Notes: generated by a model not told the origin, from the sequence alone. A DNA stretch of 63,435 bases, filler included, from Ministeria vibrans ATCC 50519 (GCA_943704425.1; 4 parts of 4 records of this genome joined end to end with filler, not necessarily neighbours in it), one strand, 5' to 3'; counted from the whole stretch's first letter, positions 4,665-28,651 are shown. Program-made: numbers and translations.

Positions 4665-7600
4665 TTATTTGGACAACTGAGTGATTGGCTCCCAATTGGC
4701 GGGCAGGGGCGAGTCAACGAGAGGACGACAGATTTTGGCCATGCGCGCAGATGGGGGATCGCCCTCAAAGCGCACGACAAGATCGTCAAAGGCGGCAAGA
4801 GCCGTGGCAAAGTCACGACGACGGTACGCTTCCAGGGCCAAGGCGTAATCGCTGCAGAGACGGTCGTAGTACGCGACGCGTTTTTCGTGAGCGGCTGCAT
4901 CACAGGCATCGTCGGGAAGGGGTTCGCTGTCGACAGGGGTCACAACAGCAGGACGCTGTGGCGTTGTCGCTGGTGTTGTTGTTGCTGTTGTCATTGTCGT
5001 CGAAATGTCATCATCGTCACTGCAGAACGGATCAGACGTGCGTCGATTTGACGAGGCAGCTCGCTCGCCGTGCCAGACGCGAGGACAGATGAGCTCGTAA
5101 AACGCAATGGCTTCGCTCTTGCCGGCGACTCGGCACCGGTCGACCTCGCGGTACACAAGTTTGCTGGGTCCGGCCGCGCGGATCGTCGCCTCAGTTGCGA
5201 GCACAAGTACCCCAAAGAACTTGGTGAGCGACTCGGTGCGCGCCGCAAGGTTGACCGTGTCACCAATCACGGTGTAGTCAAGGCGTTTGGTCGAGCCAAT
5301 GTTGCCACAGGTGAGATCACCTGTGTTGAGTCCGACGCCAACGTGGATCTCACGCAGGCCACGACGACGACGCTGGACGTTCATACGACGCCGCACCACC
5401 ACTAGATCAAGCGCAGCCAGACACGCGTCAAGAGCATCGTGCTCGCCGGCAAAAGGAACACCGTGTGCCGCCATCAAGCAGTCGCCAATAAAGCTCAAAA
5501 CAACGCCACTGTGATGTTCGCTCACCGCCACTGCCACATCAAAGTGCTCATTCAGTAGCTGCACAACCTCGCCCGAGTTCATTTCCTCGCTCAACGACGT
5601 AAAGCCACGGACATCACTAAAAAGCACCGTTGCATGCTGGCGCACCCCACCCAGACACACGTCGGCATCCGCCATCACCTTGGACAGAACCTGCGGTGAC
5701 AGATAGCGCCCCAGCGCCTGTCGTGCGCGCTTGGCCGCCGTAATATCCTCAATGCAGACAATAACGCCCGAGAGCTGTGTGGGCACGCCGGAAGAGTCAT
5801 CTGTGTTGTGCTCCAGGTCAGGCATGAGCAGAGGTGAGACGGAGTAGCTGATGGTGACGCGTGTCCCGTGTGGGGTGTCGAGATCGTAGATGACGTCGCT
5901 GATGGGATTGCCGGTGCGGTAGACGGCATGCACGTCAGCCAGGAGCGTCTTGTGGCCGCGCATAAGACGCCGAAACGTCACACCACCAGAGGATGCGTCG
6001 GTCGTGCTGTCGTCGGCAGTCGGGAAGTGAAAGAATTGCGAGAGGTGCTCGGGATGGTTAGACGAGACGTAGCGGCCAAGCGCATCAAAGGTAGTGACCG
6101 TCGTCGCAATGGCCTCAAGCACCGTCTCCTGATGCACCATCGACGAAACACCTTCGGCGTGCATGCGTGCGTGATGGAGTGCAATATGCGTCTGCGACGC
6201 GACCAACGTCAACAGATTTTCGTCGTCGTCGCTCAGCGGGACTTCCCCAGCACGCATGACCACGAGCACGCCCATCGAGCCACTGTCCACACGACTCTCG
6301 GCCGAGACACTCGTTGATGCGCCCACCGGCACAAGACACATCGACGTCGCCTTATCCAACATCGTCGTGAACATGTCGCGGTCATCTGCTCCCCCATCTC
6401 CCATTGGCAATGTACGCAGACGCTCCAAGTCCATAGCGCATTCCCGCTCCATCGACATACGATCTGTAACCAACAGCGACTTGCCCGTATGTGCCACCAG
6501 GCCCACTGCAAACCCCTCCGCTGCTCCTATAGGCATATGCACCGATGCAAACAGCTCAGGCTGGTTGGCACGCAGCTGCTCACGTCGTCTCTCCAGCTGC
6601 GCCGCGCGCCCCCTTTTCTCCATCACTGACTCTGACTCACCAATGCTCCCACCAAAGCCAGAAAGTGAGTGCATTGACGCATTGACGTTGTCCCTTGCGT
6701 CGTCACCAAAGCCAGAGAGTGAGTTCATTGACGCATTGACGTTGTCCCTCGCGCGACTGCTAACGTTGTCGTGAATGTCACAGAGCGAGCTCATTGAAGA
6801 GCTGACTGATGGTACAATGTCGTCCGGAAGACTCTCGCCTATTTTTGTGGCGGTGGTTGAAGCGGTCGCTGTTGTGTTCCGTGGCGCGAATACACCACCA
6901 AAGAACCGTGCCTGGGCGCTGTCGGGAAGTACGCACGCCTCGGAGGCCCACAGGCGATCACCGTCACGCAGAAACAGCACGCATGTGTCAGCACGTACCA
7001 GACGACAGGTTTCGCCCATAACGTGACGCATGAGTGAGCGGAGGTCGCGACCACTGGCGAGCAGCGACGAAGTGATATCCGCGAGGCGTTGCATGCGACG
7101 GTAATCGGCGGCACGGTAGTGCAGAGCGTCCGTCTCGTGTGCGATGTGCATGCTAACCTCTTCTTTGATTGTCACTGTGGCCGGTCGCACCACAAGGTAG
7201 TTTTGGAGAGCAACGCCGACGAGTGCAGCAAGTGAGAGAAGCAGCAAAGCAAAGCGTGCGGAGGAGAAGTCGTCGCTGGTGGCGTCCCCGTACTCCTCTG
7301 CAAACTCGCGCAGCTGCTGTGCTGCGAGTCTATTGTCGCCATTGTGGATCGCCGTTCCAATCCGAGAGAGAGTCTTGCGCTGTGCGGGCGACATTGCGCC
7401 TTGGCTCAGACGTGTGCGGTGTTCGTCGTCAAGCACACCCGTCACAAGCGACACATGGAGTGCCTTGAGACGACTTACGCTCGTCGTGTGCAGCGTCGTG
7501 TGCACCTCCGAGCCAGCTGCAGCACTCGCAAGGTGCACACACGAGTCTAGTTGGCGCAAGGCCGCCACGCGTGGCATGTAGTCGCGAGCGAACACTGAAT

Positions 7601-8008
7601 CAAGGAAGTGTAATAAATAAGCGAATGTGTCAAACCAAAAAAAATAAAACAACCCAAAAAGAACCCAATAAAAAAAACAAAAAAAAAACGGAAGAGATGA
7701 GAATGGGTACCAAGCTGAAACCAAAGCTGAGAGAGAAGAATGAAGAGGATGATGGCGGCAGCGGTGACGTGGTGGCGCGTGAGCAGGGCGTCGACGCCCG
7801 ACAGCCGTCCGCGCTCCCTGTGGGCGAGCGCAACGAACGCGCGCGCCGTGACGAAGTCCTTTTCGCTGGGCAGCTCTGTGCGCGTGCCCGTGCCGCGTTT
7901 GGACGCGGAATGCTGCCCAGGGAGCTGAAATTCTTCGTCGAAGACTGACGATGAAAAGGAATTCGTTCCGGCGCGTGGACGCCGTATTCGCAACGACCCC
8001 ACCGACAT
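4665..8008 (-). CDS. Membrane-anchored bacterial-type class IIIb adenylate/guanylate cyclase (2TM-GAF-PAS-cyclase-TPR-like tail); exons 8008-7711 and 7594-4665, 1075 aa
   Basis: Cyclase motifs VLFSDVRGFT, FIGDCLMA, GVGLNTG and DYTVIGDTVNLAARTE; GAF ends (LVRADTCVLFL ... DENLLTLVASQTHIAL); PAS-like segment; C-terminal ALEAYRRRDF...PLPANWEP tail typical of bacterial CyaB-like enzymes. The GT-AG intron 7710-7595 restores frame and adds the first TM. Confidence 0.9.
6650..6755 (-). repeat. 54-bp in-frame tandem duplication (ARDNVNASMxSLSGFG x2) in a GAF-domain insertion
   Basis: Two near-identical 18-codon units visible in both DNA and protein. Confidence 0.85.
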
Positions 8009-8225
8009 GGCGCAAGAGTGTGTCTTTCTGGACTGTGCTCCGCCGCCGTGTGTAGCAGATTCAACGGCGCGTTGACGTTTCTGCCGAAAAAGAAAAGACA
8101 ATAATTGTTTATTAATTTTATTTTGTCGATACTCAATTTGTTTAGATCGACTTTAATCTGTCAGTTCCCGAATTGTGCTTTACCTGAGTTTACCATCCAT
8201 ACTTCTTTTTATTATTTGATATTGA

Positions 8226-15112: not shown

Positions 15113-16907
15113 TCAATCCTTCTTGACCTTCTTTTTCTTAGAACAACTACAACACCAACACCAACAACAACAGCGAGCGCCGCAGAAAGAAACAAAGAGC
15201 GTCACGAGCACAGTAAGCGCACAAAACATGGCAATCAGGTCAAGATTGAGACGCTGCACAATGGGCCAGTCAAAGTTGACGGGACGCAAATGTCGCGTGC
15301 CAATGTTCGCCGCCTCCTGCACAATATCAGCCGCACGCTTGACGCCACCCGCACGGCGCGCCAAGTGGCGATGGCGCGCCATGTTACCCACTAGTCGTGC
15401 GTACTCGTGCGCCTCCAACGTCTTCTCTAGTGTCTCCACCAGTGTTGGGGCTGTGATGGGAAAGGGCGATGCATGTCCCACACCCGCATAGTCCAACAGG
15501 TGTGCCTTGCCCATCTGGTCCGCCAATGCCGCCGCACCTACCATAGGAAGACCCGCAGCAATCGCTTCAAACGGCGACGACTGTCCACAGTGCGTCAAAA
15601 ACACACGCACTCGCGGATGGGCCATTGCCGCCATCAGCGACGGTCTCAACCAGGTCACAATGCGCAGGTTGGGGATGGTACTGGCGTCCACCCCCGCCTT
15701 GGCCAAATCCTCCTGTTGCCACTCTGGCATCCGCCACAGCACGCGCATCCGCAGTGTCGATCGTGACCCGCCCTCTCCGTCGCCATTAAGCAGACGCACG
15801 GCCTTGACCATTTCCAGCATGCGCGATAACGGTAGAAACCCGCTCGAGCCAAAGCTCACCAGCGCCACTCCATCGTCCGTTGCATTGCCCTCAACAAACG
15901 CCCGTGTGTCTGCATCGAGTTGCTTCCAGCTGCCCGCGTCAAACTCGTCCTCGGGAAGGGGAATGGGACCAACGTAAAAGTGATTAGAGGGGACAGCGTG
16001 GGGCCACATGAAGCCAATGTAAGTCGGATGAATCACAATGCCGCTTTCAAGAAAATCTTGAACTCCGGTGTAGGTCAAGCCCACGGTCGCAAAGAGCGCT
16101 TCCAGCTCAAAAACGTACCGGCCCACAAGGTCAAAGTTGATCAAAAGTACATTCTCAAGCCAGCGACCCAAACGCAGCCAGGGAGAGCGCAGTTCGTCAG
16201 CCGAGCGGGTCGTCAGACCCCCTGGCGTTGAAAGGTCCATCATCATTGTCGGCTAAACAAGCAAAAAGAAGAAAAAAAATCAAAAGAAAAACAATAAGTC
16301 AACACTCAACAGCAACCACTTAGAAGTTAGACGTTAGAAGACGTGACGTCAGCGATAAAAGCACACTCAAGGAGGAGAGGTGATGAAAAAGTTTTAACGC
16401 CAAAACAAACATTACCAAGAGCGGATGATTGAGCACGATGGGGATGCCGGCCGCTTTTGCTGCAACGCCAACTGAATTCGAGGTGGAATCAATGTAAACC
16501 ACGTCGGGTTTGAACTTGGCAATCTGCTCTTTTGCGTCGTGGTACACAACAGAAAAATTCTTGTACATGATCTGGCCAAAGGCAAGCTTGCCAAAGCCCA
16601 CCTGGTCGTTCATTTCAGCCAGCCGGCTCGCATTGGTGCAGAATGCACGTTCAAACTCCCGCGTGTACGAGTCGCCGCGCATCACGTGCGTCGGAATGCC
16701 TTTGAGAAGGCGTTCGTTGGTGTACGCGTCGGGTGCCAGCCACAAAACGTCTTCGCCACGAGCAATCAGCTCACGTGCAGTCGGTGCCAACGTCTGAACA
16801 TGCCCCAGCATTCCAAAGCACGACATGAGAATGCGCCGTGGGCGAACAGGTGCCTCGTCGGCGCGACAGAGCAAAGCGAACGCCACAACAACACACACAA
16901 TCAACAT
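15113..16907 (-). CDS. ER-type UDP-glycosyltransferase (GT1/UGT); exons 16907-16416 and 16252-15113
   Basis: Signal peptide, catalytic His (MLGHV), signature WLRPSLMAAMAHPRVRVFLTHCGQSSPFEAIAAGLPMV...ADQ, C-terminal TM and dilysine tail KKKKVKKD. Confidence 0.92.
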
Positions 16908-18343: not shown

Positions 18344-19336
18344 TTAGGCCTGAAATCGTGAATCGCCCGTTGAAAAGCGATTTGAAAGATCTCTTTGAGC
18401 GAGTTTGCTGCGCTCAATCTCGTTCACCTTGGGTCCAATGGACAGGTCGCGGTCGCGGTCCCACGCGCGATACGTCGACGCTCCCTCAGCCTTGTCGCGT
18501 GCCTTCTTGTCCGCAAGCTCCTTTGTGTGCTGCGCCAGAAGCGACTCGGTGCGCGCCGACGCATTGTACGCGTCCACCTGCGCCTCCAGGGCCCTTTGCT
18601 TCTTGCTTTTCTTCTTCTTTTGAACGTCTTTGGCCGCCTCAATCTCTTGCTTGGCTCGGTAGGCTGGATCCGACTCGCGTAGCTCTCGTTCACGTCGTGC
18701 CTCGGGCGACTCCGTCCACACACCTCGTTCGCCCATCTCCAGCGCCGCCTTACGAAAGGTCCGCGGTGCAAGCGCATCAATGCGACCCTCCTTTGGCAGC
18801 TCCAGCATCCATGTCTCTCGCTTCTTCTTGCCATCGTCCGCGTTGGCCAGACGTTCGCGCTCTCGCTCAATCATCGACTGCATTGCAGGATTGTAGTCGG
18901 CAAACGCGCGTTGCTCGTCTTCCGTCGGCGGCAACGGCCCCACGTCCTCGTGATCATACTCATCATCATCGTCGTCGTCATCGTCGTCGTCGTCGTCTTG
19001 CGGCGGGGGCAGTGCTGGGCCAAGAATCCGTCGCTTTTTGATCGGCTGTGCACTGTCGTCGTGATCTTTGGCGTTGTCGTCCTTGCCGTCGTCGTCCGAC
19101 CTTCGTCGCCGAAACCCAGGGGGTAATGCAGGTCCGGCAACCATGCTAGGGGGCAAGGAGGGAGCGGCGCCGGCTGGTTGCAAGTGAGGCGGGAGTGCTG
19201 GACCAGCAACTTGCGGGGGCAATGCAGGGCCCGCTGTGGGGCCAACGCTGCTCTGGGTGGCTGAAGATGATGGGTTGGGTGAACTCGAACGCGATCGGGG
19301 ACGAAAGCCCGGAGGAAGCGAAGGGCCAAAGCTCAT
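18344..19336 (-). CDS. GPALPP1: GPALPP motif-containing protein 1 (DUF3752)
   Basis: Repeated GPALPP motifs, RETWMLELP, WTESP, SLL..H, WDRDRDL and L..RFS.G. Confidence 0.9.
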   Translation of the reverse strand: MSFGPSLPPGFRPRSRSSSPNPSSSATQSSVGPTAGPALPPQVAGPALPPHLQPAGAAPSLPPSMVAGPALPPGFRRRRSDDDGKDDNAKDHDDSAQPIKKRRILGPALPPPQDDDDDDDDDDDDEYDHEDVGPLPPTEDEQRAFADYNPAMQSMIERERERLANADDGKKKRETWMLELPKEGRIDALAPRTFRKAALEMGERGVWTESPEARRERELRESDPAYRAKQEIEAAKDVQKKKKSKKQRALEAQVDAYNASARTESLLAQHTKELADKKARDKAEGASTYRAWDRDRDLSIGPKVNEIERSKLAQRDLSNRFSTGDSRFQA

Positions 19337-19540: not shown

Positions 19541-22500
19541 TTACAGGTGGACAGACAAATTGCGAGAGAGACGCGTCGGCTGGGTACCGGTGCCTGTGGA
19601 GGAAGGCGCAAGGTCGCCCAGCTGATCGACAGTGTCGTCTTCGTCGTACCCCGCGGTGTTCTCGGGGACAAAGAGAGGGTTCACCACGACGTCGTCGAGG
19701 CCGAGGTCGTTGGTGGTGCCCCCGCTGGGGTTGGACTGCGACAGCACGCCGAGAAAGTCGGCAGGTGACAAGTGCTCCTCCGTCGTGAAACTGCTGCTTC
19801 GCGACGGGTTCATGACCTCATTGTTGTTGAAGGAGTCGACGGGGAAGAACTCGTTGAGAATGTTGCGCGTCGCACGTTGCTTCTTCCATTGTACCACACC
19901 AAAGACAACGGCAATGAGCAGTACAATGACCACAACGCCCACAACGCCTCCAATGATGCCGATGCTCATGCCCCCGCTGTTGCCCTGGCTGCCCGTCGCC
20001 GTGGACGCCGCCGTGGCCGAGACAAACGTCATTGTCCCACCCACGGCCGCAACAATGCTTGCCTGTGCCGCCGTGACACTATCGGCCACAATGGTTCCCA
20101 TCACAGGCGCACTACCGTCGTTCTCGTTTACCACATACGTGACACGCACTCGCCCATTGGACAGCGCTACAATCGACAGGTATGTCACATCGGCACCCGA
20201 CACGGGCGTCGGCGCCGCCGCACGGCGACGCACCGACGCTGTCGTGTTGTCGCGGTACGTATTGACAGCGTTTGCAATGGCATCCGACAGTGCCGTCTCG
20301 TGGTCCATCACACCGTTTGTCGTCGCACTACCCAGAATCATCAGCACACTGTTGGTCGACTCTTCCGAAGTCGGCACAAACCCATTGCATGCGTCCACCG
20401 CATCCTCCACCAACGTGTAGCCAAAGACGCACTGGCTGCACTGCGAGTTACTCGCCGACGTACACGTCAGCTTCGTCGAGCGACAGTTGGCAATGGCGGT
20501 GCACGGTACACATACGCCTCCGCTTAGGAAGTAGCCCTGGCCACACGCCGCGCACACCGCGTCCGTCGTGCCTGCACACGTCGTGAGCGTCGTGCAGCCG
20601 GTGAAGTCGCTCAGAGTGCTGCACGCGGTGCATCCTAAAGCATCGCCGTAAAAGTTGGTCGCGCAGGTGCACGTGTATGCATGCACGCTGTCCGCACACG
20701 TGTTGGCTGCATCGCCACACGGCGACGACGCACACTCGTCAATGTCCACGGCGCAGTCAGAGCCGCCAAAGCCCTGCGCACACGTGCACGTAAATGACCC
20801 CACGGACTGGGTGCACGTCGCGCCGTTGGTGCACGGCGACGACGCACACTCGTCAATGTCTGTCTCGCATGTCACACCCGCATAGCCCGTCACACATGAA
20901 CACGTAAAGCTGTCAATGCCATCGGTGCACGCTGCTCCGTTTAAGCACGCACCGGATGCACACTCGTCCACGTCAGTCGCACAATCGTCGCCCATAAACC
21001 CAGACGCACACAAACACACGTGGCCATTGAGACCATCCACACAGGTGGCGCCGTTGGTGCAAGGACTCGACACACACTCGTCAATATCTGACTCACATGT
21101 CACGCCCGTCGTGCCGGCCACACACGCACACGAAAAAGCATTGGGAAGATCCAAACACGTTGCACCATTCTCGCATGGACTCGACACACACTCGTTCAGG
21201 TCGTCGGCGCACAACGTCCCGTCAAATCCACTGCCACACACACACGAAAAGCCGCCGGACCCGTCCACACAGGTGGCCGTGCCATGACACGGCGTCGAGG
21301 CACACTCGTCTACGTCCGTCTCGCATCGTGTGCCCGCGAAACCGGGCGCACAAGTACACGTGAACGTGTTGATAGCCTGCTGGCAGTTGGTCGCGCCGTT
21401 GGAGCACGGCGACGACGCACACTCGTCAATGTCCTCCTGGCATCGATCGCCCGTAAATCCTGGAAGACACGCACACGAGTAGGCATTGAGAGCATCGCCA
21501 CAGGTTGCTCCATTCAGGCACGGATTTGACGCACAGTCGTTGAAGTTGGTCTGGCACCGTGTGCCCTGGTAGCCAGCAACACACGCACACTGGTACGAGT
21601 TGATTCGGTCGAGGCAAGTGCCGCCATTTTGGCAAGGTGCCGAAACACACTCGTCAATGTTGTTTTTGCAGGTGAGGCCGGTGTAGCCGGCGACACACGT
21701 GCACGTGTAGCCTGCAAGGCTGTCCGTACAGGTGCCGCCAAATTCACAAGGATTCGACAGACATTCGTTGATTGCCGACTCGCACACGGTGCCGGTAAAT
21801 CCATCGGCACAGGTGCACGTGAAGCCGTTGGTCACGTCGGCACAGGTGGCGCCGTTGGAGCACGGAGAAGAGGCACACTCGTCGACGTTGCTCGTACATG
21901 TTGGATCGAACAGACCGGCAGGACATTCGCAACTAAAGGCGTCAACCAAGTCGGTACAGGTGCCACCGCCGGCACACGGGTTAGGCGCACAATCGTCAAT
22001 GTTTGTCTCGCACAAGGTGCCGGTGAAACCGGCGACACAGACACACGAGTAGGACGCAACCTCGTCGTTGCAAACAGCCCCATTCTGGCACGGCGTGCTC
22101 GCACACTCGTTGACGTTGACAGCACACGTGTCGCCCACATAGCCAGCGGCACAGTCGCACGTAAACTTGTCAATGCCGTCGTTGCATGTGCCGCCATTGT
22201 CGCACGGCGACGAGGCGCACTCGTCAAGCTCCGAGGCACAGTCGGAGCCGGTAAAGCCGCTGGGACACAGGCACGAGTACACGTTGGGCAACACGCCCAC
22301 AGTAAGCGTACCCGTCATGGTGGTGGGGTGCACCGTGCACTGGAAGGTGACCGATCCAAGCGCGGTGACCCGCTGCTCAAAAACGCCACCCGACGGCGAC
22401 ATGAAGCCCGAGTCAAACGACTGTGTACTGCCCGCCGTCGTTGTGACAGTGTGCGTCGCGCCATCGGTGGCAGTCCAGCGCACAAGGTCGCCCTGGTGCA

Positions 22501-25500
22501 CTTGCACTGACAGGGGGAAAGGACCGCACGCGAGACACCAGTTGATGTTGCGCACAGTGGGCACCGATTGCACACACATGCCGCCGTTGGTGCACGGCGA
22601 CGAGGCACACTCGTCAATGTCCGACTCACAGAGCACGCCCGTGTAGCCAGACACGCATGCACACGTGTACCCATTGATACCATCGGTGCACTCGGCACCA
22701 TTGAGACACGGCTGCGGCGCGCACTCGTCGATGTTCGTCTCGCACCCAACGCCAACAAACCCGGTGACACACTGACAAGCATACCCGTCGATCTGATCAA
22801 GACAGGTGGCGCCATTCGCACACGGCGACGAAGCACACTCGTCAATGTTCACCTGGCAGTTGGTACCCGTAAAGCCCGCCTTGCACTCGCACGTGTACAC
22901 GTCGGGAGCACGCACCCCTACTTCGAGCTTGCCCACCATAAATGGATGCAGAGAGCACTTGTAGTCGATAGCACCGGCCGCCGATAGTGTCTGCTCGTAG
23001 ACGCTGCCTGGTGGAAGCTCGCCCGAGTCAAAGCTCATAGCCCCGCCCGCCAAGGTAGTCACCGTGTGCGAAGACGAGTCGGTGAAGTCCCAACGCACCG
23101 TGTCACCCAGAGTGAGACCCGCCGTTGTCACGGGAAACGACCCGCACGCCAGACACCAGGGCACGGTGACCGTGTGTCGCGTGCCCTCCTGACACGTACC
23201 GCCATTTTGGCATGGATTCGACGCACACTCGTTAATGTCCGTCAAGCACTGGCGGTCGGTGTAGCCGGCAACACACTCGCACGAGTACGAGCCAATAATC
23301 TGTGTGCAAGTGCCACCATTTGCGCATGGATTCGAAGCACACTCGTCGATGTCACTTGCACAGTGCACACCGGTAAAGCCTGTCACACACATGCATGTGT
23401 AGCCCGCCACAACGTCGTTGCAAGTGGCACCGTTGGTGCACGGGCTCGATGCACACTCGTCCGTGTCGGTCTGGCAAGTGACACCATGCCACCCCGTGAC
23501 GCACTCGCACACAAAACTCGCCACCCCATCGTGGCACGTTCCAGCGTTAAGACAAGGCGGCGGACTGCACTCGTCAACGTTGGTTTCACAACGGACACCA
23601 GTGAAGCCGGATGGACAGGCGCACTCAAAGGAAAAAGCGCCATCGGCACAGGTGCCGCCATTGCTGCAGGGAGAGGAGTCACACTCGTCTTCGTTCGTGT
23701 CACACTGAACCCCCGAGAAACCCGCCGCGCAAATGCACGAGAACTTGTTGACCCCGTCCACACAGGTGGCACCGTTGCTGCATGGCGACGAGTCGCACTC
23801 GGGGATGTTCGTTTCGCAGACGACACCCGTGTACCCGGCAACACACACACACACGTAGCTGGCAAGACCGTCGAGACACGTCGCGCCGTTGTTGCACGGA
23901 GTGGAACTGCACTCGTCAATGTTCGTTTGGCAATGAGTACCGGTAAAACCGGCGGCGCAGGTACAGGTGAACGAGTCAATGCCATTGAAGCAAGTGGCAC
24001 CATTGCTGCACGGCGACGAAATGCACTCGTCAATTTCAACGCAAGTCGGCATGGAGCGAGACCAGACGGCAACCTGCCGCACTGCACTCACGACGTTGCG
24101 CGAGCGCTCAAACGGCTGGCAGGTTGAGCTGCTCGCACCGACCAACTCGTAGCCGGCGTCGCAGGTGAACTGGCACTCGCTTCCCACGGCAATGCCCGAC
24201 GTGCAGCTCACTGCACCATTGGGTGGTGCCGAGAGTGGCACGGTACAGCTGTGCTTGTCGGCACAGCAGCGCACGGCGGCCGTTGTGGTCCACGCCGAGC
24301 AGGTCAGCGGGAAACTGCCAATTTGCGAGGCGACCCCGGCCAGGCGGTAAAACATGTTGGTGCCACAGCTCGTTTGAGTCCATATCGACGCGGAGTCATA
24401 ACTGCAGCCTGTGCCCGCAGCCACATTATCTTGAACCTCCTGAAGCGTACACAATCGCGCGCCAACATCGAGGCACGCGGAACGAGCACTCGTCCATGTA
24501 GCAGCACTGGGAAAGCACACGGAGGCGCTTTCGTCGGCGAGAACAAAGGACTCGGCTTCGGCACACTGATCGGGCGAGGTTGGCTGCTTAAACTCAAAGT
24601 TGATGGCGGTGCAGGACGAGACGGAAACGGGTCCGTCGGCACAGCAACGGACGCGCGCGACGGCAGTCGATTGACCCGGCGTGCACAAGGGCGTGCCGGA
24701 GCCGGCTGTACTAAGTGTGTAGTAGCCCGAGGCGCACGAGGTCGAGGACCAGGTGACCGTGTTGCCACAGCTGCTCGCGTCGTCCGCTTCGCCGTTGGCA
24801 AGCTCGTGAATGGTGCACAATCGTGCTCCTAACGCACTGCAGGCAGTCTCGGCGGCGGTGTGGGTGACAAAGTTGGTATAGCACGTGCCACCGGTGTCCT
24901 TGCCCAAAGCGCACACACGGTGAGCACCAGGCCCGCTCCCGACGCCCAGGACGTCGCACTGTTTCGCGGAGGGTACAGGAAAGGCACCGAGGGTTGTCGG
25001 ACCCGACGCCATCGAGCCAGTCACCAGAGGCACGCACTCGGTGGTACCACTCCATGCGGCAGTGGCACGAACAGTCTTGCGATAGGCCTGCTCGGTTTGA
25101 GCGACGCATGAGACTGTCTCGTCGCCCAACAGGTAGTAGCCATTGTCGCACACTGTGGTACATGCCGAGTCGGTGTTCGCCGAGTTGCTGCAATATACAC
25201 TGCCATGCGCAACAACAGGCACCGCCTTGCAGGCGGTCACGTCGCCACAACACCGTACGTTGGTCGTGGACGTCTCGGCAACGCAAGAGGTGGCACACAG
25301 AGAAGGATTGCCACATTCGCTGCTGCGCTTTCCAGCAGCGCACATGGTTGACGTAAAAATAGAGGTAGAGTCATAATTGCACCCGGTGCCGCGCGTGGCC
25401 GAGTTGGTCATCTCTTCCAAGGTACACACACGTCCACCGACTCCTTCGCAGATGGAGGTTGCCTGTGCAAACGTCTTGGCTGCTTGACATGCGAAATTGA

Positions 25501-28500
25501 CGTTGTCCGACTCGCCACACAGAGTTGTCTTGACCCACGAAGGTCCATTGACGGGCGTGGTAAATGCCAGGGCGGGGCCGCACGAGACTGGACTCACTTC
25601 AAAGTAGCTACAGCACACCGTGGTCACGGTAGTGTCGAGTGGTGAGGAGCACTCGAGCGGAGTGGTGCCCAAGTTTGCCGTGTTGCCCGCCGCCGTGTAG
25701 TAGCCGGAAGAGCCGTCCGCGTTGAAGCACGTCGTCTGCGACCACACGCGCTTTGTGTCAACAGCACACGATGTGGCGCTCTTGGCTTCGTCGCCGAGAA
25801 TCTCGCCAATGGTGCAAAGGCGTGCTCCCAGATTGGAGCAGGTTTGTGCAGCGTCGCTGTGTAGCTGCGTGCCAAGGCACGATGTCAGCATGTCCGTGCT
25901 ACTTGCACAAATGCCCCTGGAGCCCGCTCCCGATAGGTAATTGGTACCAATGTTGGCACAGGACTTGGTTGTCGCCAATTTGTGCACGATCAGCACGCAT
26001 TCTGGTACTCCAGCGGTCCAGCGACCCCAGCGTTGCGTGGAGGCACGCTCGAGGGCCGTCATGGTGCCACACTTGGTCGAGGGGTCACCGACGAGGCGGT
26101 AGCCGGCGTCGCAGGTGAAGGTACAGACCGAGCCAATGGTGGTACTGGATGTGCACGAGACGGAGCCATGTGCGGGGGCGAGTGGAGTGAAGTAGCAGCG
26201 CGCCTTGTCGGCGCAGCAGCGGATAGCATTGGCGGAAGTCTTGGGGGAGCACGTGGTGGGAGCCGATGTGGTAGGGGAACCATTGCCACGCATGGTCCAG
26301 GTCGAGCTACCGCCTACGTCGCAGGTAGTGGAGGAAGTAATGATACTGTTGTCAAAGCTGCAGCCGGTGCCGCTCGTGATCAAGCCCGTCAACGACTCAG
26401 TTTTCGTACACAGCCGGGCGCCACGGCTCTCACAGGTTGACTCGTACGTTGCATAGTTGGCGCCGCTGACACAAGGTTCGGATTCGCCACAGAAGACATC
26501 CCAAGGTGCGGGCCTGACGAGCCAATTTTCGGCGGTGAGTGGTGAAACGCCACAGGCACTTGTAGAGATGACATCGTTGGCACAACAGCGCACGTGAAGG
26601 AGCGTGGATGCGGTGGGGGGCGTACACTCAAGGGGGTTGTCGCCCATGCCATTCGCGGCACCCGCAAGCGTGTAGTAGCCGTTGACACCGTCACGCACAC
26701 ACGGCGTCTGTGTCCAAATCCGGGCGGTGTCGTGGCCGCAGCCGGATGCTCCGGGGATTCCTCCCTCCACTTCGGTAACGGTGCACAGACGCATACTGTT
26801 TGCTTGGCACAGATGGTGGGCCTCACGCAGCGTCACGCCCGGGGTAGCACCGTTTGTGGAGATGCCGTTGATGCAGTTGGCATTGCTTTGGTCACTTGTG
26901 TAGAGAGGGGGCTTCTGGCTCGCTCCACACGTTTGCGTGACGCCAACACTGGAAAGACCCAGGGCGGGACAGGACAGCTTGGAGCGAACAATGTAGTCGT
27001 CGGCCTTGCCATCTTCGGCACAACAGCGGTAGAAGAGCTTGCTGTCGCGCGAAGTGCATGCAAGCGCGTTACCCGAGTTGATCGACTTGGTGAGAACACC
27101 AGAGCCGCCGTTGGGGAGCTTGCACGGCGTCGAGCTCCAGAGACGCTCGTAGTCGTAGCCGCAGCCAGTGCCCGTTGTTTCGCCCACGTTGATTTCGCCA
27201 ATGGTACACATACGAGCTCCAACGCTGCGGCACGTGTGCGAGGCAGTCACGTAGTTCTGCATATTGGGCGGGCCGAAACTGGCGACATTGTCTACCGTCC
27301 CGCTCAGGTAGGTGCCGGCAAAACACTTTCCATTTGCAAATAGAGGCGAGCTGCAAATGGTAGCTGCGTTGTCGGTGCTAGTGTACGTGTCTAGAGTCCA
27401 GCCAAGGGCGGTGCACGATTTGGCAGACCAGGCGAGAGTAGCCGTGAGCGGCTTGACGATGGTGTTGCAGCAGCGGACACTTGCAGTCGAAGATGTGGCC
27501 GGGGTACACTGGCGAGGCACGGTGGCCAAGTTGGACGCTCTGCCTGACTGAGTCCAGAGTGAGATGGTACCGTCGACAGCGACGTCGCACACGGAGCTGG
27601 ACCAGATGCGCCTGTTGTCGTAGGTAAGGCAGCCGCCGTTGACGGAGGCCGCCTCGTCATTGGCAATTTCGGTGATGGTGCAGACACGACCGCCAGCTTC
27701 GCGGCACTCGTCGTTGGCCACGTCAAAGGTCACATCAGCCGTGCCACACTCCTTCATGACACACGTGCTATGACTGGTGCTGGAAGTGTCCCAGCCCGTT
27801 CCCAGCGACGAGCAGTGGTTGGGTGTGACGTAGGTGGCGGTGTCGGCGCAACAGCGAATACCGCCAGCGCCAAAAGAGGTGGGAGTACACGTGCCGAGAC
27901 CGGAACCTCCGCCGCCGAGCGTGAGCATCGCCTTGGTGGGAAGACCGGTCGACGAAGACTCACACACCGTTTCAGACCAGACGCCACGCGAGTCGAGGCC
28001 ACAATCGGCCGAGGCCGCCTCGCCATTGTCAAGTTCTTCAGATGTGCACAGGCGTGCGCCGATTGAGGCACACGCTGCCATGGCGTCCGAGTGGCTTCCC
28101 ACACCGAAGCAACGTGATGAATTTGGCGCGAGTGACGAGCCGCAAACATTTGGGAATCCTCCGTGAGAATTCCAGCCCAGTTCCGCACAGGTCTGATCGC
28201 TCGAAAGGGGTCCCACTGTCTCGTTGTAGAAGTACTGGGACTCCGTTGCTTGCGCGGGGACCGAGCGACGCGACATTTTTAGAACAACAGCTTCTTGGGC
28301 ACGCCCTTCGCGAACAAGGACGAGGCGAGCGTCGCGATCAAGACGAATGGGGTGATGTTGAGACAGCTCGACGCATGAGCGTGCGACGGAGGTCGGCGAT
28401 GAAGACATGTCGGCGAAGTGAGCAACCGCAAGAATCTCACTAGATGCTGCTGATGATATCCAAAGGGAGTTACCGTGAATGCGCACGGGACCGACATGCT

Positions 28501-28651
28501 GCGCAGACGATTGGGACTTGATGTAGACATGGGAGGCTGACAAGTGTGCGTGTGGCAGGTCGCACGGACCCCGCATCGCATCTGCGGTTTTGGTGCTCAA
28601 AAGCAAACACTCTGCGAACATGACTAGAAACATGCCGAGGGTCGCTCGCAT
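19541..28651 (-). CDS. Giant single-exon type I membrane receptor (3036 aa): signal peptide, 9 Cys-rich GARLCT...RCC modules, 3 Sushi/CCP domains, 25 calcium-binding EGF repeats (two containing cupredoxin inserts), Cys-rich TNFR-like segment, SEA-like stalk, TM, short tail
   Basis: Domains counted in the translation: (D/N)(I/V)DEC.S.PC.NG.TC repeats; HTV...C..HP.(.)M copper sites; [26 protein letters not shown] followed by KKQR. Confidence 0.92.

What the first reader, a model, noticed from the sequence alone, without database searches (positions are those of the whole stretch)
22285..23190. Type-1 blue-copper (cupredoxin) domains nested inside EGF repeats of a Notch-like receptor
Seen: EGF repeats 8 and 11 are each split between their 3rd and 4th cysteines (...NGGTCQEG[insert][11 protein letters not shown] and ...NGGMCVQS[insert][11 protein letters not shown]) by a ~92-aa plastocyanin-like domain. 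Each insert has a complete His/Cys/His/Met ligand set (HTV...CSLHPFM; HTV...CTVHPTTM) and a WCLACG CxxC motif. Known: cupredoxins are electron-transfer domains. I do not recall insertion into an EGF hairpin of a calcium-binding EGF array. Inference: an extracellular redox- or copper-sensing adhesion receptor.
Basis: partly seen in the sequence, partly recalled or inferred. Interest (0 to 1): 0.82.

Follow-up and report, generated by a model that had tools for sequence, protein, structure and literature searches.

The report
Blue-copper domains nested inside EGF repeats
A giant cell-surface protein of an unidentified protist (probably a single-celled relative of animals) carries two complete blue-copper (cupredoxin) domains, each spliced into the hairpin of an EGF repeat; the same genome holds at least 13 such composite modules, and I found the arrangement described nowhere else.

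Summary
Window 19541-28651 (minus strand) is one 3036-aa open frame. It encodes a signal peptide, Cys-rich repeats, Sushi domains, 25 EGF repeats, a transmembrane helix and a short tail. EGF8 and EGF11 are each split between Cys3 and Cys4 by a ~91-aa insert.

- **Sequence:** the inserts match Pfam Copper-bind and solved amicyanin, plastocyanin and archaeal cupredoxins (E down to 1.9e-8). His/Cys/His/Met align to the known copper ligands.
- **Recurrence:** the genome (29.7 Mb; integrin-beta and T-box genes present) holds at least 13 nested copies on 11 contigs. All share the insertion point, keep all four ligands, and group together in a tree.
- **W-C-x-x-C motif:** it is W-C-x(2-6)-C across copies, so more likely a disulfide staple than a redox motif.
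- **"Notch-like":** true only of the EGF array.

No nested EGF-cupredoxin turned up in protein, metagenome or literature searches, but those searches had real limits. Copper binding and redox function are inferred, not shown. Verdict: a new variant of known kinds, of moderately high interest.

The parts
19541..28651 (-). Single-exon gene for a 3036-aa type I membrane protein (the stop codon is included in the coordinates)
   Evidence: ORF list and translation; Pfam EGF, hEGF, EGF_CA and Copper-bind
28577..28651 (-). Predicted signal peptide (aa 1-25, [25 protein letters not shown])
   Evidence: Read from the translation; inference, no predictor was run
24038..28576 (-). N-terminal ectodomain: about nine Cys-rich repeats (GARLCT..E motif, weak Link-domain signal) and Sushi domains
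   Evidence: Pfam Sushi E 6e-12 and Xlink E 0.0014 and 0.00062, both below cut-off; only 3 distant homologues were found
20621..24037 (-). Array of 25 EGF repeats (aa 1539-2677), most with the D/N-x-D/N-E/Q-C calcium-binding N-terminus
   Evidence: Pfam EGF E 1.1e-151 and EGF_CA E 1.2e-31; regex counts
23183..23239 (-). EGF8, N-terminal half (Cys1-Cys3; aa 1805-1823)
   Evidence: in the model this strand still pairs with the C-terminal half
22910..23182 (-). Cupredoxin insert 1 (aa 1824-1914). Putative Cu ligands His1862 (23066-23068), Cys1899 (22955-22957), His1902 (22946-22948), Met1905 (22937-22939). W1832-C1833-x2-C1836 loop
22850..22909 (-). EGF8, C-terminal half (Cys4-Cys6; aa 1915-1934)
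22565..22621 (-). EGF11, N-terminal half (aa 2011-2029)
22292..22564 (-). Cupredoxin insert 2 (aa 2030-2120). Putative Cu ligands His2067 (22451-22453), Cys2105 (22337-22339), His2108 (22328-22330), Met2112 (22316-22318). W2038-C2039-x2-C2042 loop
   Evidence: Pfam PF00127 24.9 bits, above the 21.2 cut-off; PDB phmmer E 1.9e-7; 47% identical to insert 1
22232..22291 (-). EGF11, C-terminal half (aa 2121-2140)
19892..19969 (-). Predicted transmembrane helix (aa 2895-2920)
   Evidence: Hydrophobic stretch [26 protein letters not shown] followed by KKQR; inference
19544..19891 (-). Cytoplasmic tail (aa 2921-3036) with no recognised domain; contains an NPLF motif
   Evidence: Pfam found nothing significant; the motif was read from the translation

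Best explanation
The two inserts are intact type-1 (blue) copper cupredoxin domains of the amicyanin/plastocyanin/halocyanin kind. Each replaces the turn of the main beta-hairpin (between Cys3 and Cys4) of a calcium-binding-type EGF repeat. The copper domain therefore sticks out sideways from an otherwise uninterrupted, Notch-like EGF rod on the outside of the cell.

This 'EGF-with-cupredoxin' unit is a lineage-specific composite module. It most likely arose from one insertion event and then spread by duplication into at least 11 giant surface-protein genes of this 29.7-Mb eukaryotic genome.

Each domain most likely binds one copper ion through His/Cys/His/Met (His1862/Cys1899/His1902/Met1905 and His2067/Cys2105/His2108/Met2112). 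It would then act as a one-electron redox centre displayed in the cell coat. In that role it would relay electrons between the cell surface and extracellular acceptors or donors. A possible partner is a protein elsewhere in the genome that joins two cupredoxins of the same family to a cytochrome-b561-like membrane domain.

Shown by computation: the sequence homology, the predicted fold, the nesting geometry, the invariance of the ligands, and the recurrence of the module. Inferred: copper binding (about 0.75), the W-C-x(2-6)-C disulfide, and electron transfer as the function (about 0.4).
For: - Homology: Pfam PF00127; NCBIfam amicyanin, halocyanin and plastocyanin models, all below their cut-offs; PDB sequence hits at E 1.9e-8 to 1e-6 with all four ligands aligned.
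- Recurrence: 18 matches in the own genome. Thirteen are nested at the same Cys3/Cys4 site on 11 contigs.
- Selection: His, Cys, His, Met and the Trp-Cys are invariant in 17 copies that are only 31-51% identical.
- Single origin: the 13 nested copies, plus one non-nested copy from the same genome, form a clade apart from prokaryote-type domains (support 95/94).
- Redox context: on contig C1296, two domains of the same family precede a four-helix membrane region. The protein atlas places that region with cytochrome b561 (score 0.88, ten of ten best hits) and Pfam gives DUF2427 at E 0.012.
Against: - No experiment shows copper binding.
- Insert 1 alone scores 19.9 bits, just under the Pfam cut-off of 21.2.
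- No electron donor or acceptor is known.
- The cytochrome-b561 reading of the C1296 protein is weak. PF03188 did not pick it up, PDB sequence search found nothing, and its single-sequence AF2 model is unreliable (pLDDT 52).
- Model coordinates could not be read, so the orientation of the copper site, the N-to-C distance of the insert and the W-C...C disulfide were not measured.
- Animal ephrins show that a cell-surface cupredoxin fold can serve recognition alone.
Confidence: 0.6

Rival explanations
1. Recognition or adhesion module. The nested cupredoxins act mainly as protein- or ligand-binding knobs on an adhesion stalk, as ephrin receptor-binding domains do. Copper serves only as a structural cofactor, or is not bound at all.
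For: The host is a giant EGF/Sushi/Link-like surface protein of adhesion type. Ephrin receptor-binding domains have the cupredoxin fold and are proposed to derive from single-domain cupredoxins on the animal stem (PMC6485061). The genome carries integrin-beta and T-box genes, which suggests a relative of animals. Laminin L4 domains, nested at the same Cys3/Cys4 position of LE modules, have no known catalytic role (PMC5338690).
Against: All four copper ligands are invariant in 17 of 17 copies at 31-51% identity, whereas ephrins have lost them. Pfam gives only Copper-bind for the inserts, not Ephrin.
Confidence: 0.22
2. Copper buffering or sensing. The many copper sites in the surface coat sequester or report extracellular copper rather than transfer electrons.
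For: There are at least 17 copper-site domains in surface proteins of one small genome.
Against: Type-1 sites are rigid, buried, high-affinity sites that are not known to exchange metal readily (established knowledge of cupredoxins). The cytoplasmic tail has no signalling domain. One copper per ~90 residues, within proteins of thousands of residues, is a poor store.
Confidence: 0.12
3. Artefact. The inserts are retained introns, assembly chimeras or bacterial contamination, not part of the mature protein.
For: The nearest relatives of the domain outside this genome are prokaryotic.
Against: Both inserts are in frame, without stops, in a 9.1-kb ORF. They score as cupredoxins at E 1e-8. Thirteen paralogous nested copies on 11 contigs share the exact insertion point. 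They form their own clade with a family-specific W-C...C motif that is absent from all 150 best database hits.
Confidence: 0.03

Closest known systems
Single-domain type-1 copper proteins (amicyanin, plastocyanin, pseudoazurin, halocyanin; Pfam PF00127), and the C-terminal cupredoxin of the Nitrosopumilus maritimus multicopper oxidase/NirK-like protein (PDB 9cck) and purple cupredoxin (5fc9)
   Different: Those proteins are free or lipid-anchored electron carriers, or terminal domains of enzymes, in bacteria, archaea and plastids. Here the domain is nested inside an EGF repeat of a eukaryotic surface protein. It also carries an extra W-C-x(2-6)-C pair that none of the 150 best database hits has. 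It scores far below the equivalog cut-offs for amicyanin, plastocyanin and the rest.
Laminin L4 domain inserted in a laminin-type EGF (LE) module
   Same: [quoted passage not shown]
   Different: The guest domain there is CBM35-like, not a cupredoxin, and has no metal redox site. The host there is an 8-Cys LE module, not a 6-Cys calcium-binding EGF. It is found in animals only.
Ephrin receptor-binding domain
   Same: A cupredoxin-fold domain tethered to the outside of the cell membrane in the animal lineage, proposed to derive from single-domain cupredoxins (PMC6485061).
   Different: Ephrins have lost the copper ligands, are not nested in EGF, and have their own disulfides. Pfam Ephrin did not match the inserts here.
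Notch, Crumbs and Eyes-shut type EGF arrays
   Same: Long tandem calcium-binding EGF repeats; 22 O-glucose (C-x-S-x-P/A-C) and 21 O-fucose (C-x4-S/T-C) consensus sites; 47-50% identity to Notch EGF11-13 over the EGF parts of the model.
   Different: No LNR, NOD or ankyrin domains are present. None of the 120 best EGF-array proteins from the database lists PF00127 among its Pfam domains.
Ascidian Tuphoxins (cbEGF - TSP1 - tyrosinase - cupredoxin-like)
   Same: EGF-like and cupredoxin-like domains occur in one secreted protein (PMC9395347).
   Different: The domains there are in line, not nested, and the copper chemistry is that of a tyrosinase, not a type-1 site.

Membership tests
Cupredoxin / Copper-bind (PF00127), type-1 blue copper domain | Sequence match to the family profile above the curated cut-off | tested here: met
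   Whole protein 30.4 bits against 21.2. Insert 2 alone 24.9 bits. Insert 1 alone 19.9 bits, just under the cut-off, but E 1.9e-8 to PDB cupredoxins.
Cupredoxin / Copper-bind (PF00127), type-1 blue copper domain | Greek-key beta-sandwich fold | tested here: met
Cupredoxin / Copper-bind (PF00127), type-1 blue copper domain | Ligand set: an upstream His plus Cys-x(n)-His-x(m)-Met in the C-terminal loop | tested here: met
   The ligands align in register with amicyanin and 9cck and are invariant in 17 genome copies.
Cupredoxin / Copper-bind (PF00127), type-1 blue copper domain | Binds copper, with a ~600-nm band, a type-1 EPR signal and a reversible Cu(II)/Cu(I) couple | not testable with these tools
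   Needs expression and spectroscopy.
Amicyanin, plastocyanin, pseudoazurin or halocyanin proper (NCBIfam TIGR02657, TIGR02656, TIGR02375, TIGR03102) | Score above the equivalog or subfamily cut-off | tested here: not met
   The best score is 32.1 bits against a cut-off of 110.2 (amicyanin); the others are lower. The inserts are related to these families but are not members of any of them.
Calcium-binding EGF (host repeats EGF8 and EGF11) | Six cysteines in EGF spacing and a D/N-x-D/N-E/Q-C N-terminus | tested here: met
Calcium-binding EGF (host repeats EGF8 and EGF11) | Asp/Asn (hydroxylation and Ca-ligand position) two residues after Cys3 | tested here: inconclusive
   The host repeats have Glu or Gln there (CQEG, CVQS, and most paralogues) instead of Asp or Asn. 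Calcium binding could not be assessed.
Notch receptor | LNR repeats, NOD/NODP heterodimerisation region and intracellular ankyrin repeats | tested here: not met
   The Pfam scan of the whole protein lists only EGF-type families and Copper-bind. LNR domains occur on other contigs of the genome.
Ephrin | Match to the Ephrin profile; loss of copper ligands; ephrin-type disulfides | tested here: not met
   A Pfam scan of the inserts at E up to 1 returned only PF00127. The copper ligands are retained.
Cytochrome b561 (for the C1296 cupredoxin fusion used as context) | Match to PF03188; four-helix core with two His pairs | tested here: inconclusive
   Atlas feature search: all ten best named hits are PF03188 clusters, score 0.88. 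Pfam DUF2427 E 0.012. The PF03188 genome search did not report it. AF2 pLDDT 52.

The most novel reading that the evidence does not exclude
The nested blue-copper domains form a eukaryotic cell-surface electron-transfer system. Copper centres held out on EGF stalks would be fed across the membrane by the cupredoxin-cytochrome-b561-like fusion. Alternatively or additionally, they may preserve a 'pre-ephrin' stage, in which copper-binding cupredoxins had already been recruited into membrane-tethered, adhesion-type surface proteins in a unicellular relative of animals, before ephrins lost the metal.
Probability: 0.15. Interest if true: 0.85.

Novelty: new variant of a known kind. Interest (0 to 1): 0.68.

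Why it matters
Type-1 copper domains are classic soluble electron carriers of bacteria, archaea and chloroplasts. Finding them with intact ligand sets, built into the hairpins of EGF repeats of giant eukaryotic surface proteins, and amplified at least 13 times, points to an unexplored use of blue copper at a eukaryotic cell surface.

It is also a clean natural example of domain nesting in a very small host module. It parallels laminin L4-in-LE and could guide protein engineering.

If the organism is indeed a close unicellular relative of animals, it bears on the proposed descent of ephrins from copper-binding cupredoxins. The claim is directly testable with a ~90-residue recombinant domain.

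Tried and rejected
- Word search with the EGF8-EGF11 region. It was swamped by animal EGF-array proteins. None of the 120 listed carries PF00127. It said nothing about the insert.
- Word search scored on insert 1 alone, among proteins of 1670-5313 aa. 506 candidates, none at E <= 0.01. The method is word-based, and records of the window's own genome may be hidden.
- Full HMMER search of 1.84 billion representatives with the two inserts. 9976 hits at E <= 0.001. The 150 listed are ranked by summed score, so prokaryote-type tandem cupredoxins dominate. None has an EGF pattern or a W-C..C motif. Single-domain eukaryotic hits scoring below about 93 bits could not be seen.
- Two metagenome scans. 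The first confirmed no hit. The second gave 52 loci; the ten inspected, including all four that cover the N-terminal part of the domain, are bacterial stand-alone cupredoxins. Those four carry a C-terminal sorting-tail-like sequence and have 'DW' where this family has 'WC'.
- The 17-sequence alignment was too diverse for a metagenome scan.
- ESM Atlas with the 206-aa module. It returned only a generic EGF cluster at 0.76.
- Exact look-ups of window proteins and cluster names for distant N-terminal homologues.
- Organism identity. LHC and elicitin were not found; integrin-beta (3 loci), T-box (2 loci), LNR and GT90 are present. This fits a unicellular holozoan of about 30 Mb, of the size reported for Capsaspora (from memory), but the identification is not proven.
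- Cytochrome-b561 test of the C1296 fusion. Pfam, PDB sequence search, the PF03188 genome search and single-sequence AF2 were negative or inconclusive. I did not run a fold search on that low-confidence model.
- Literature. 12 papers mention both cupredoxin and EGF-like. The titles and abstracts, and the passages I read in two of them, give no sign of nesting.
Full report
**The gene.** Window 19541-28651 on the minus strand is one uninterrupted 3036-codon frame. In order, it reads:
- a hydrophobic signal-like N-terminus;
- about 1500 residues of Cys-rich repeats, with two Sushi domains (E 6e-12) and weak, sub-threshold Link-domain signals;
- an array of EGF repeats from aa 1539 to 2677 (Pfam EGF E 1.1e-151, EGF_CA E 1.2e-31);
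- a Cys-rich juxtamembrane stretch;
- one hydrophobic helix (aa 2895-2920);
- a 116-residue tail with no recognised domain.

The neighbouring genes are eukaryotic: a GAF-cyclase, a UDP-glycosyltransferase split by a short intron, and a DUF3752 protein.

**The observation.** A regular-expression count finds 23 uninterrupted EGF repeats and two gaps in the series, at the eighth and eleventh positions. In both gaps the first three cysteines of an EGF ([19 protein letters not shown] and [19 protein letters not shown]) are followed by about 91 residues. Then comes the second half of the EGF ([17 protein letters not shown] and [17 protein letters not shown]). With the insert removed, Cys3 and Cys4 are 8 residues apart, as in the neighbouring repeats.

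**What the inserts are.**
- Pfam finds Copper-bind (PF00127) in the whole protein at 30.4 bits, against a cut-off of 21.2. The isolated inserts score 19.9 and 24.9 bits.
- Against the sequences of solved structures, the best hits are the C-terminal cupredoxin of the Nitrosopumilus maritimus copper protein 9cck (E 1.9e-8 and 1.9e-7) and amicyanin (E 3.5e-7). Plastocyanin, pseudoazurin and the N. maritimus purple cupredoxin follow.
- In the printed alignments, the His of HTVT and the Cys-x2-His-x2/3-Met loop fall on the known copper ligands.
- NCBIfam models for amicyanin, halocyanin, plastocyanin and pseudoazurin match only far below their cut-offs. The domains belong to the superfamily but to none of those named families.

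**Predicted structure.** I aligned EGF7-EGF8[insert]-EGF9 with 12 paralogous modules and folded it. Mean pLDDT is 89.1, and 92-97 across the insert.
- The strand before the insert and the strand after it are both kept, so the cupredoxin replaces the hairpin turn.
- Foldseek finds both Notch EGF11-13 (target TM-score up to 0.80) and plastocyanin or amicyanin.
- Both folds are therefore predicted to be intact, and the EGF rod is not broken.
- I could not read the coordinates, so distances within the copper site and in the W-C..C loop were not measured.

**A recurrent module.** Searching the window's own genome (29.7 Mb, 2860 contigs) with the two inserts gave 18 matches, most of them inside open frames of 1000-3700 codons.
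- Reading the flanks shows 13 copies nested at exactly the same place: after Cys3 of a C-x-S-x-P-C-x-N-G-G-x-C half-EGF, and before an x-F/Y-x-C-x-C-x-x-G-F/Y-x-G-x-x-C half. They lie on 11 contigs.
- Other copies lie in line between EGFs (C1426) and in a Thr-rich stretch that follows an SRCR-like motif (C2390).
- Two further copies lie in tandem in front of a four-helix membrane region (C1296).
- Across 17 copies that are 31-51% identical, the four ligands, a Trp and the Cys after it are invariant. Every copy has a second Cys 2-6 residues later.
- Invariant ligands at this level of divergence argue that copper binding is under selection.
- The variable C-to-C spacing argues for a small disulfide-stapled loop rather than a thioredoxin-like CxxC. 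This is an inference.
- In a maximum-likelihood tree, the 13 nested copies, plus one C1296 copy on a long branch, form a clade apart from prokaryote-type domains (support 95/94). That fits one insertion event followed by duplication of the composite module. The alignment has only 86 columns, so finer branching is unresolved.

**Relatives elsewhere.**
- The exhaustive HMMER search found 9976 proteins at E <= 0.001. The 150 listed are mostly tandem cupredoxins of prokaryotic type. None has an EGF pattern or the W-C..C motif. Because the list is ranked by summed score, single-domain hits under about 93 bits were not visible.
- A word search scored on insert 1 alone, among proteins of 1670-5313 residues, found nothing.
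- None of the 120 best EGF-array proteins lists PF00127.
- Of two metagenome scans, one confirmed nothing and the other returned 52 loci. The ten I inspected are bacterial stand-alone cupredoxins.
- Twelve papers mention both cupredoxin and EGF-like. I judged ten of them from titles and abstracts and read passages of two, and saw no sign of nesting.
'Not found' therefore means not found with these means.

**The organism.** No name could be obtained. The genome has three integrin-beta loci and two T-box loci. It also has LNR domains and GT90 glycosyltransferase genes. No light-harvesting proteins or elicitins were found. From established knowledge, T-box together with integrin-beta points to a unicellular holozoan. 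The 29.7-Mb size and about 55% G+C are close to what I recall being reported for Capsaspora. This remains an inference. Krishnan et al. (PMC6485061) surveyed single-domain cupredoxins in holozoans and scored Capsaspora as zero. Their survey excluded multidomain proteins.

**How it most likely works.**
- Shown by computation: an intact cupredoxin with a full type-1 ligand set projects from the hairpin of a calcium-binding-type EGF, in the ectodomain of a membrane protein. This module has been amplified.
- Inferred: each domain binds one copper (about 0.75) and serves as a surface-displayed one-electron centre (about 0.4).
- Only context speaks for redox. The C1296 protein joins two domains of the same family to a membrane region that the protein atlas places with cytochrome b561 (score 0.88; all ten best named hits) and that Pfam links weakly to DUF2427. 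PF03188, PDB sequences and a single-sequence AF2 model did not confirm this.
- The main rival is a recognition role like that of ephrins. The retained ligands argue against a purely structural use, but they do not exclude copper-dependent binding.

**Comparison with what is known.**
- The guest domain is a known kind (type-1 cupredoxin) and so is the host (cbEGF).
- Nesting a globular domain between Cys3 and Cys4 of an EGF-like module has a precedent in laminin L4-in-LE (PMC5338690).
- What appears new is the combination: a redox-metal domain as guest in a six-cysteine cbEGF, its family-specific W-C..C feature, and its expansion in the surface proteins of one protist.
- The protein is not a Notch homologue (no LNR, NOD or ankyrin). 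The inserts are not ephrins.

**Verdict.** It is a new variant of known kinds. Interest is 0.68.

Noticed in passing
L019:2896-3978 (-) = G000:C1296: An open frame with two cupredoxins of the same W-C..C family in tandem, a Thr/Ala-rich linker and a four-helix membrane region with conserved His residues. The protein atlas places the membrane part with cytochrome b561 (0.88) and Pfam gives DUF2427 at E 0.012. PF03188, PDB sequences and AF2 (pLDDT 52) did not confirm this. ORFs that look like an NADPH-oxidase/ferric-reductase membrane domain (judged by eye) lie at L019:512-1214 (-).
   Followed up: partly
window 24038-28576 (-), aa 26-1538: About nine ~150-residue Cys-rich repeats with a recurring 'GARLCT..E...E' motif and only weak Link/C-type-lectin-like signals, interspersed with Sushi domains. 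Only three distant homologues (26-36% identity, all unnamed and from environmental assemblies) were found among 5.8 billion clusters. This may be an undescribed domain.
   Followed up: partly
window 20621-24037 (-): Of the 25 EGF repeats, 22 carry the O-glucose consensus C-x-S-x-P/A-C and 21 the O-fucose consensus C-x4-S/T-C known from Notch. GT90 (POGLUT-like) genes exist in the genome. POFUT1 was not looked for.
   Followed up: partly
window 19544-19891 (-): The cytoplasmic tail contains an NPLF (NPxF/Y-like) motif, and the ectodomain has a tribasic VRRRA site about 90 residues before the membrane helix. Both were read by eye only.
   Followed up: no
G000:C2097:26677-27084 (-) and C2583, C386, C985: LNR (Notch) domains, including three in tandem in a 1322-codon open frame. 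The genome therefore has LNR-containing proteins distinct from the window's gene.
   Followed up: no
G000:C1426:5399-5638 and 6602-6877 (-): One open frame holds both a nested cupredoxin (inside an EGF) and an in-line cupredoxin (between two EGFs, with W-C-x5-C). Both arrangements therefore coexist in one protein.
   Followed up: partly
G000:C2677:68617-69990 (-): A second locus with two nested EGF-cupredoxin modules about 1.1 kb apart. A stop-containing stretch just before the host EGF of the second module looks like a short intron.
   Followed up: no
P0148, P0151, P0179 and others (representative library): Proteins of 1300-3700 residues with up to 12 Copper-bind domains plus PKD domains and about 3% Cys. 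My C-x2-H-x(2-5)-M pattern finds no ligand loop in them. Origin unknown.
   Followed up: no
window 4665-8015 (-), 15113-16907 (-), 18344-19336 (-): Neighbouring genes: a GAF + adenylate/guanylate cyclase protein (1116-codon ORF), a sterol-glucosyltransferase-like gene (GT28 N-terminal domain + UDPGT) split by one short intron, and a DUF3752 protein.
   Followed up: no
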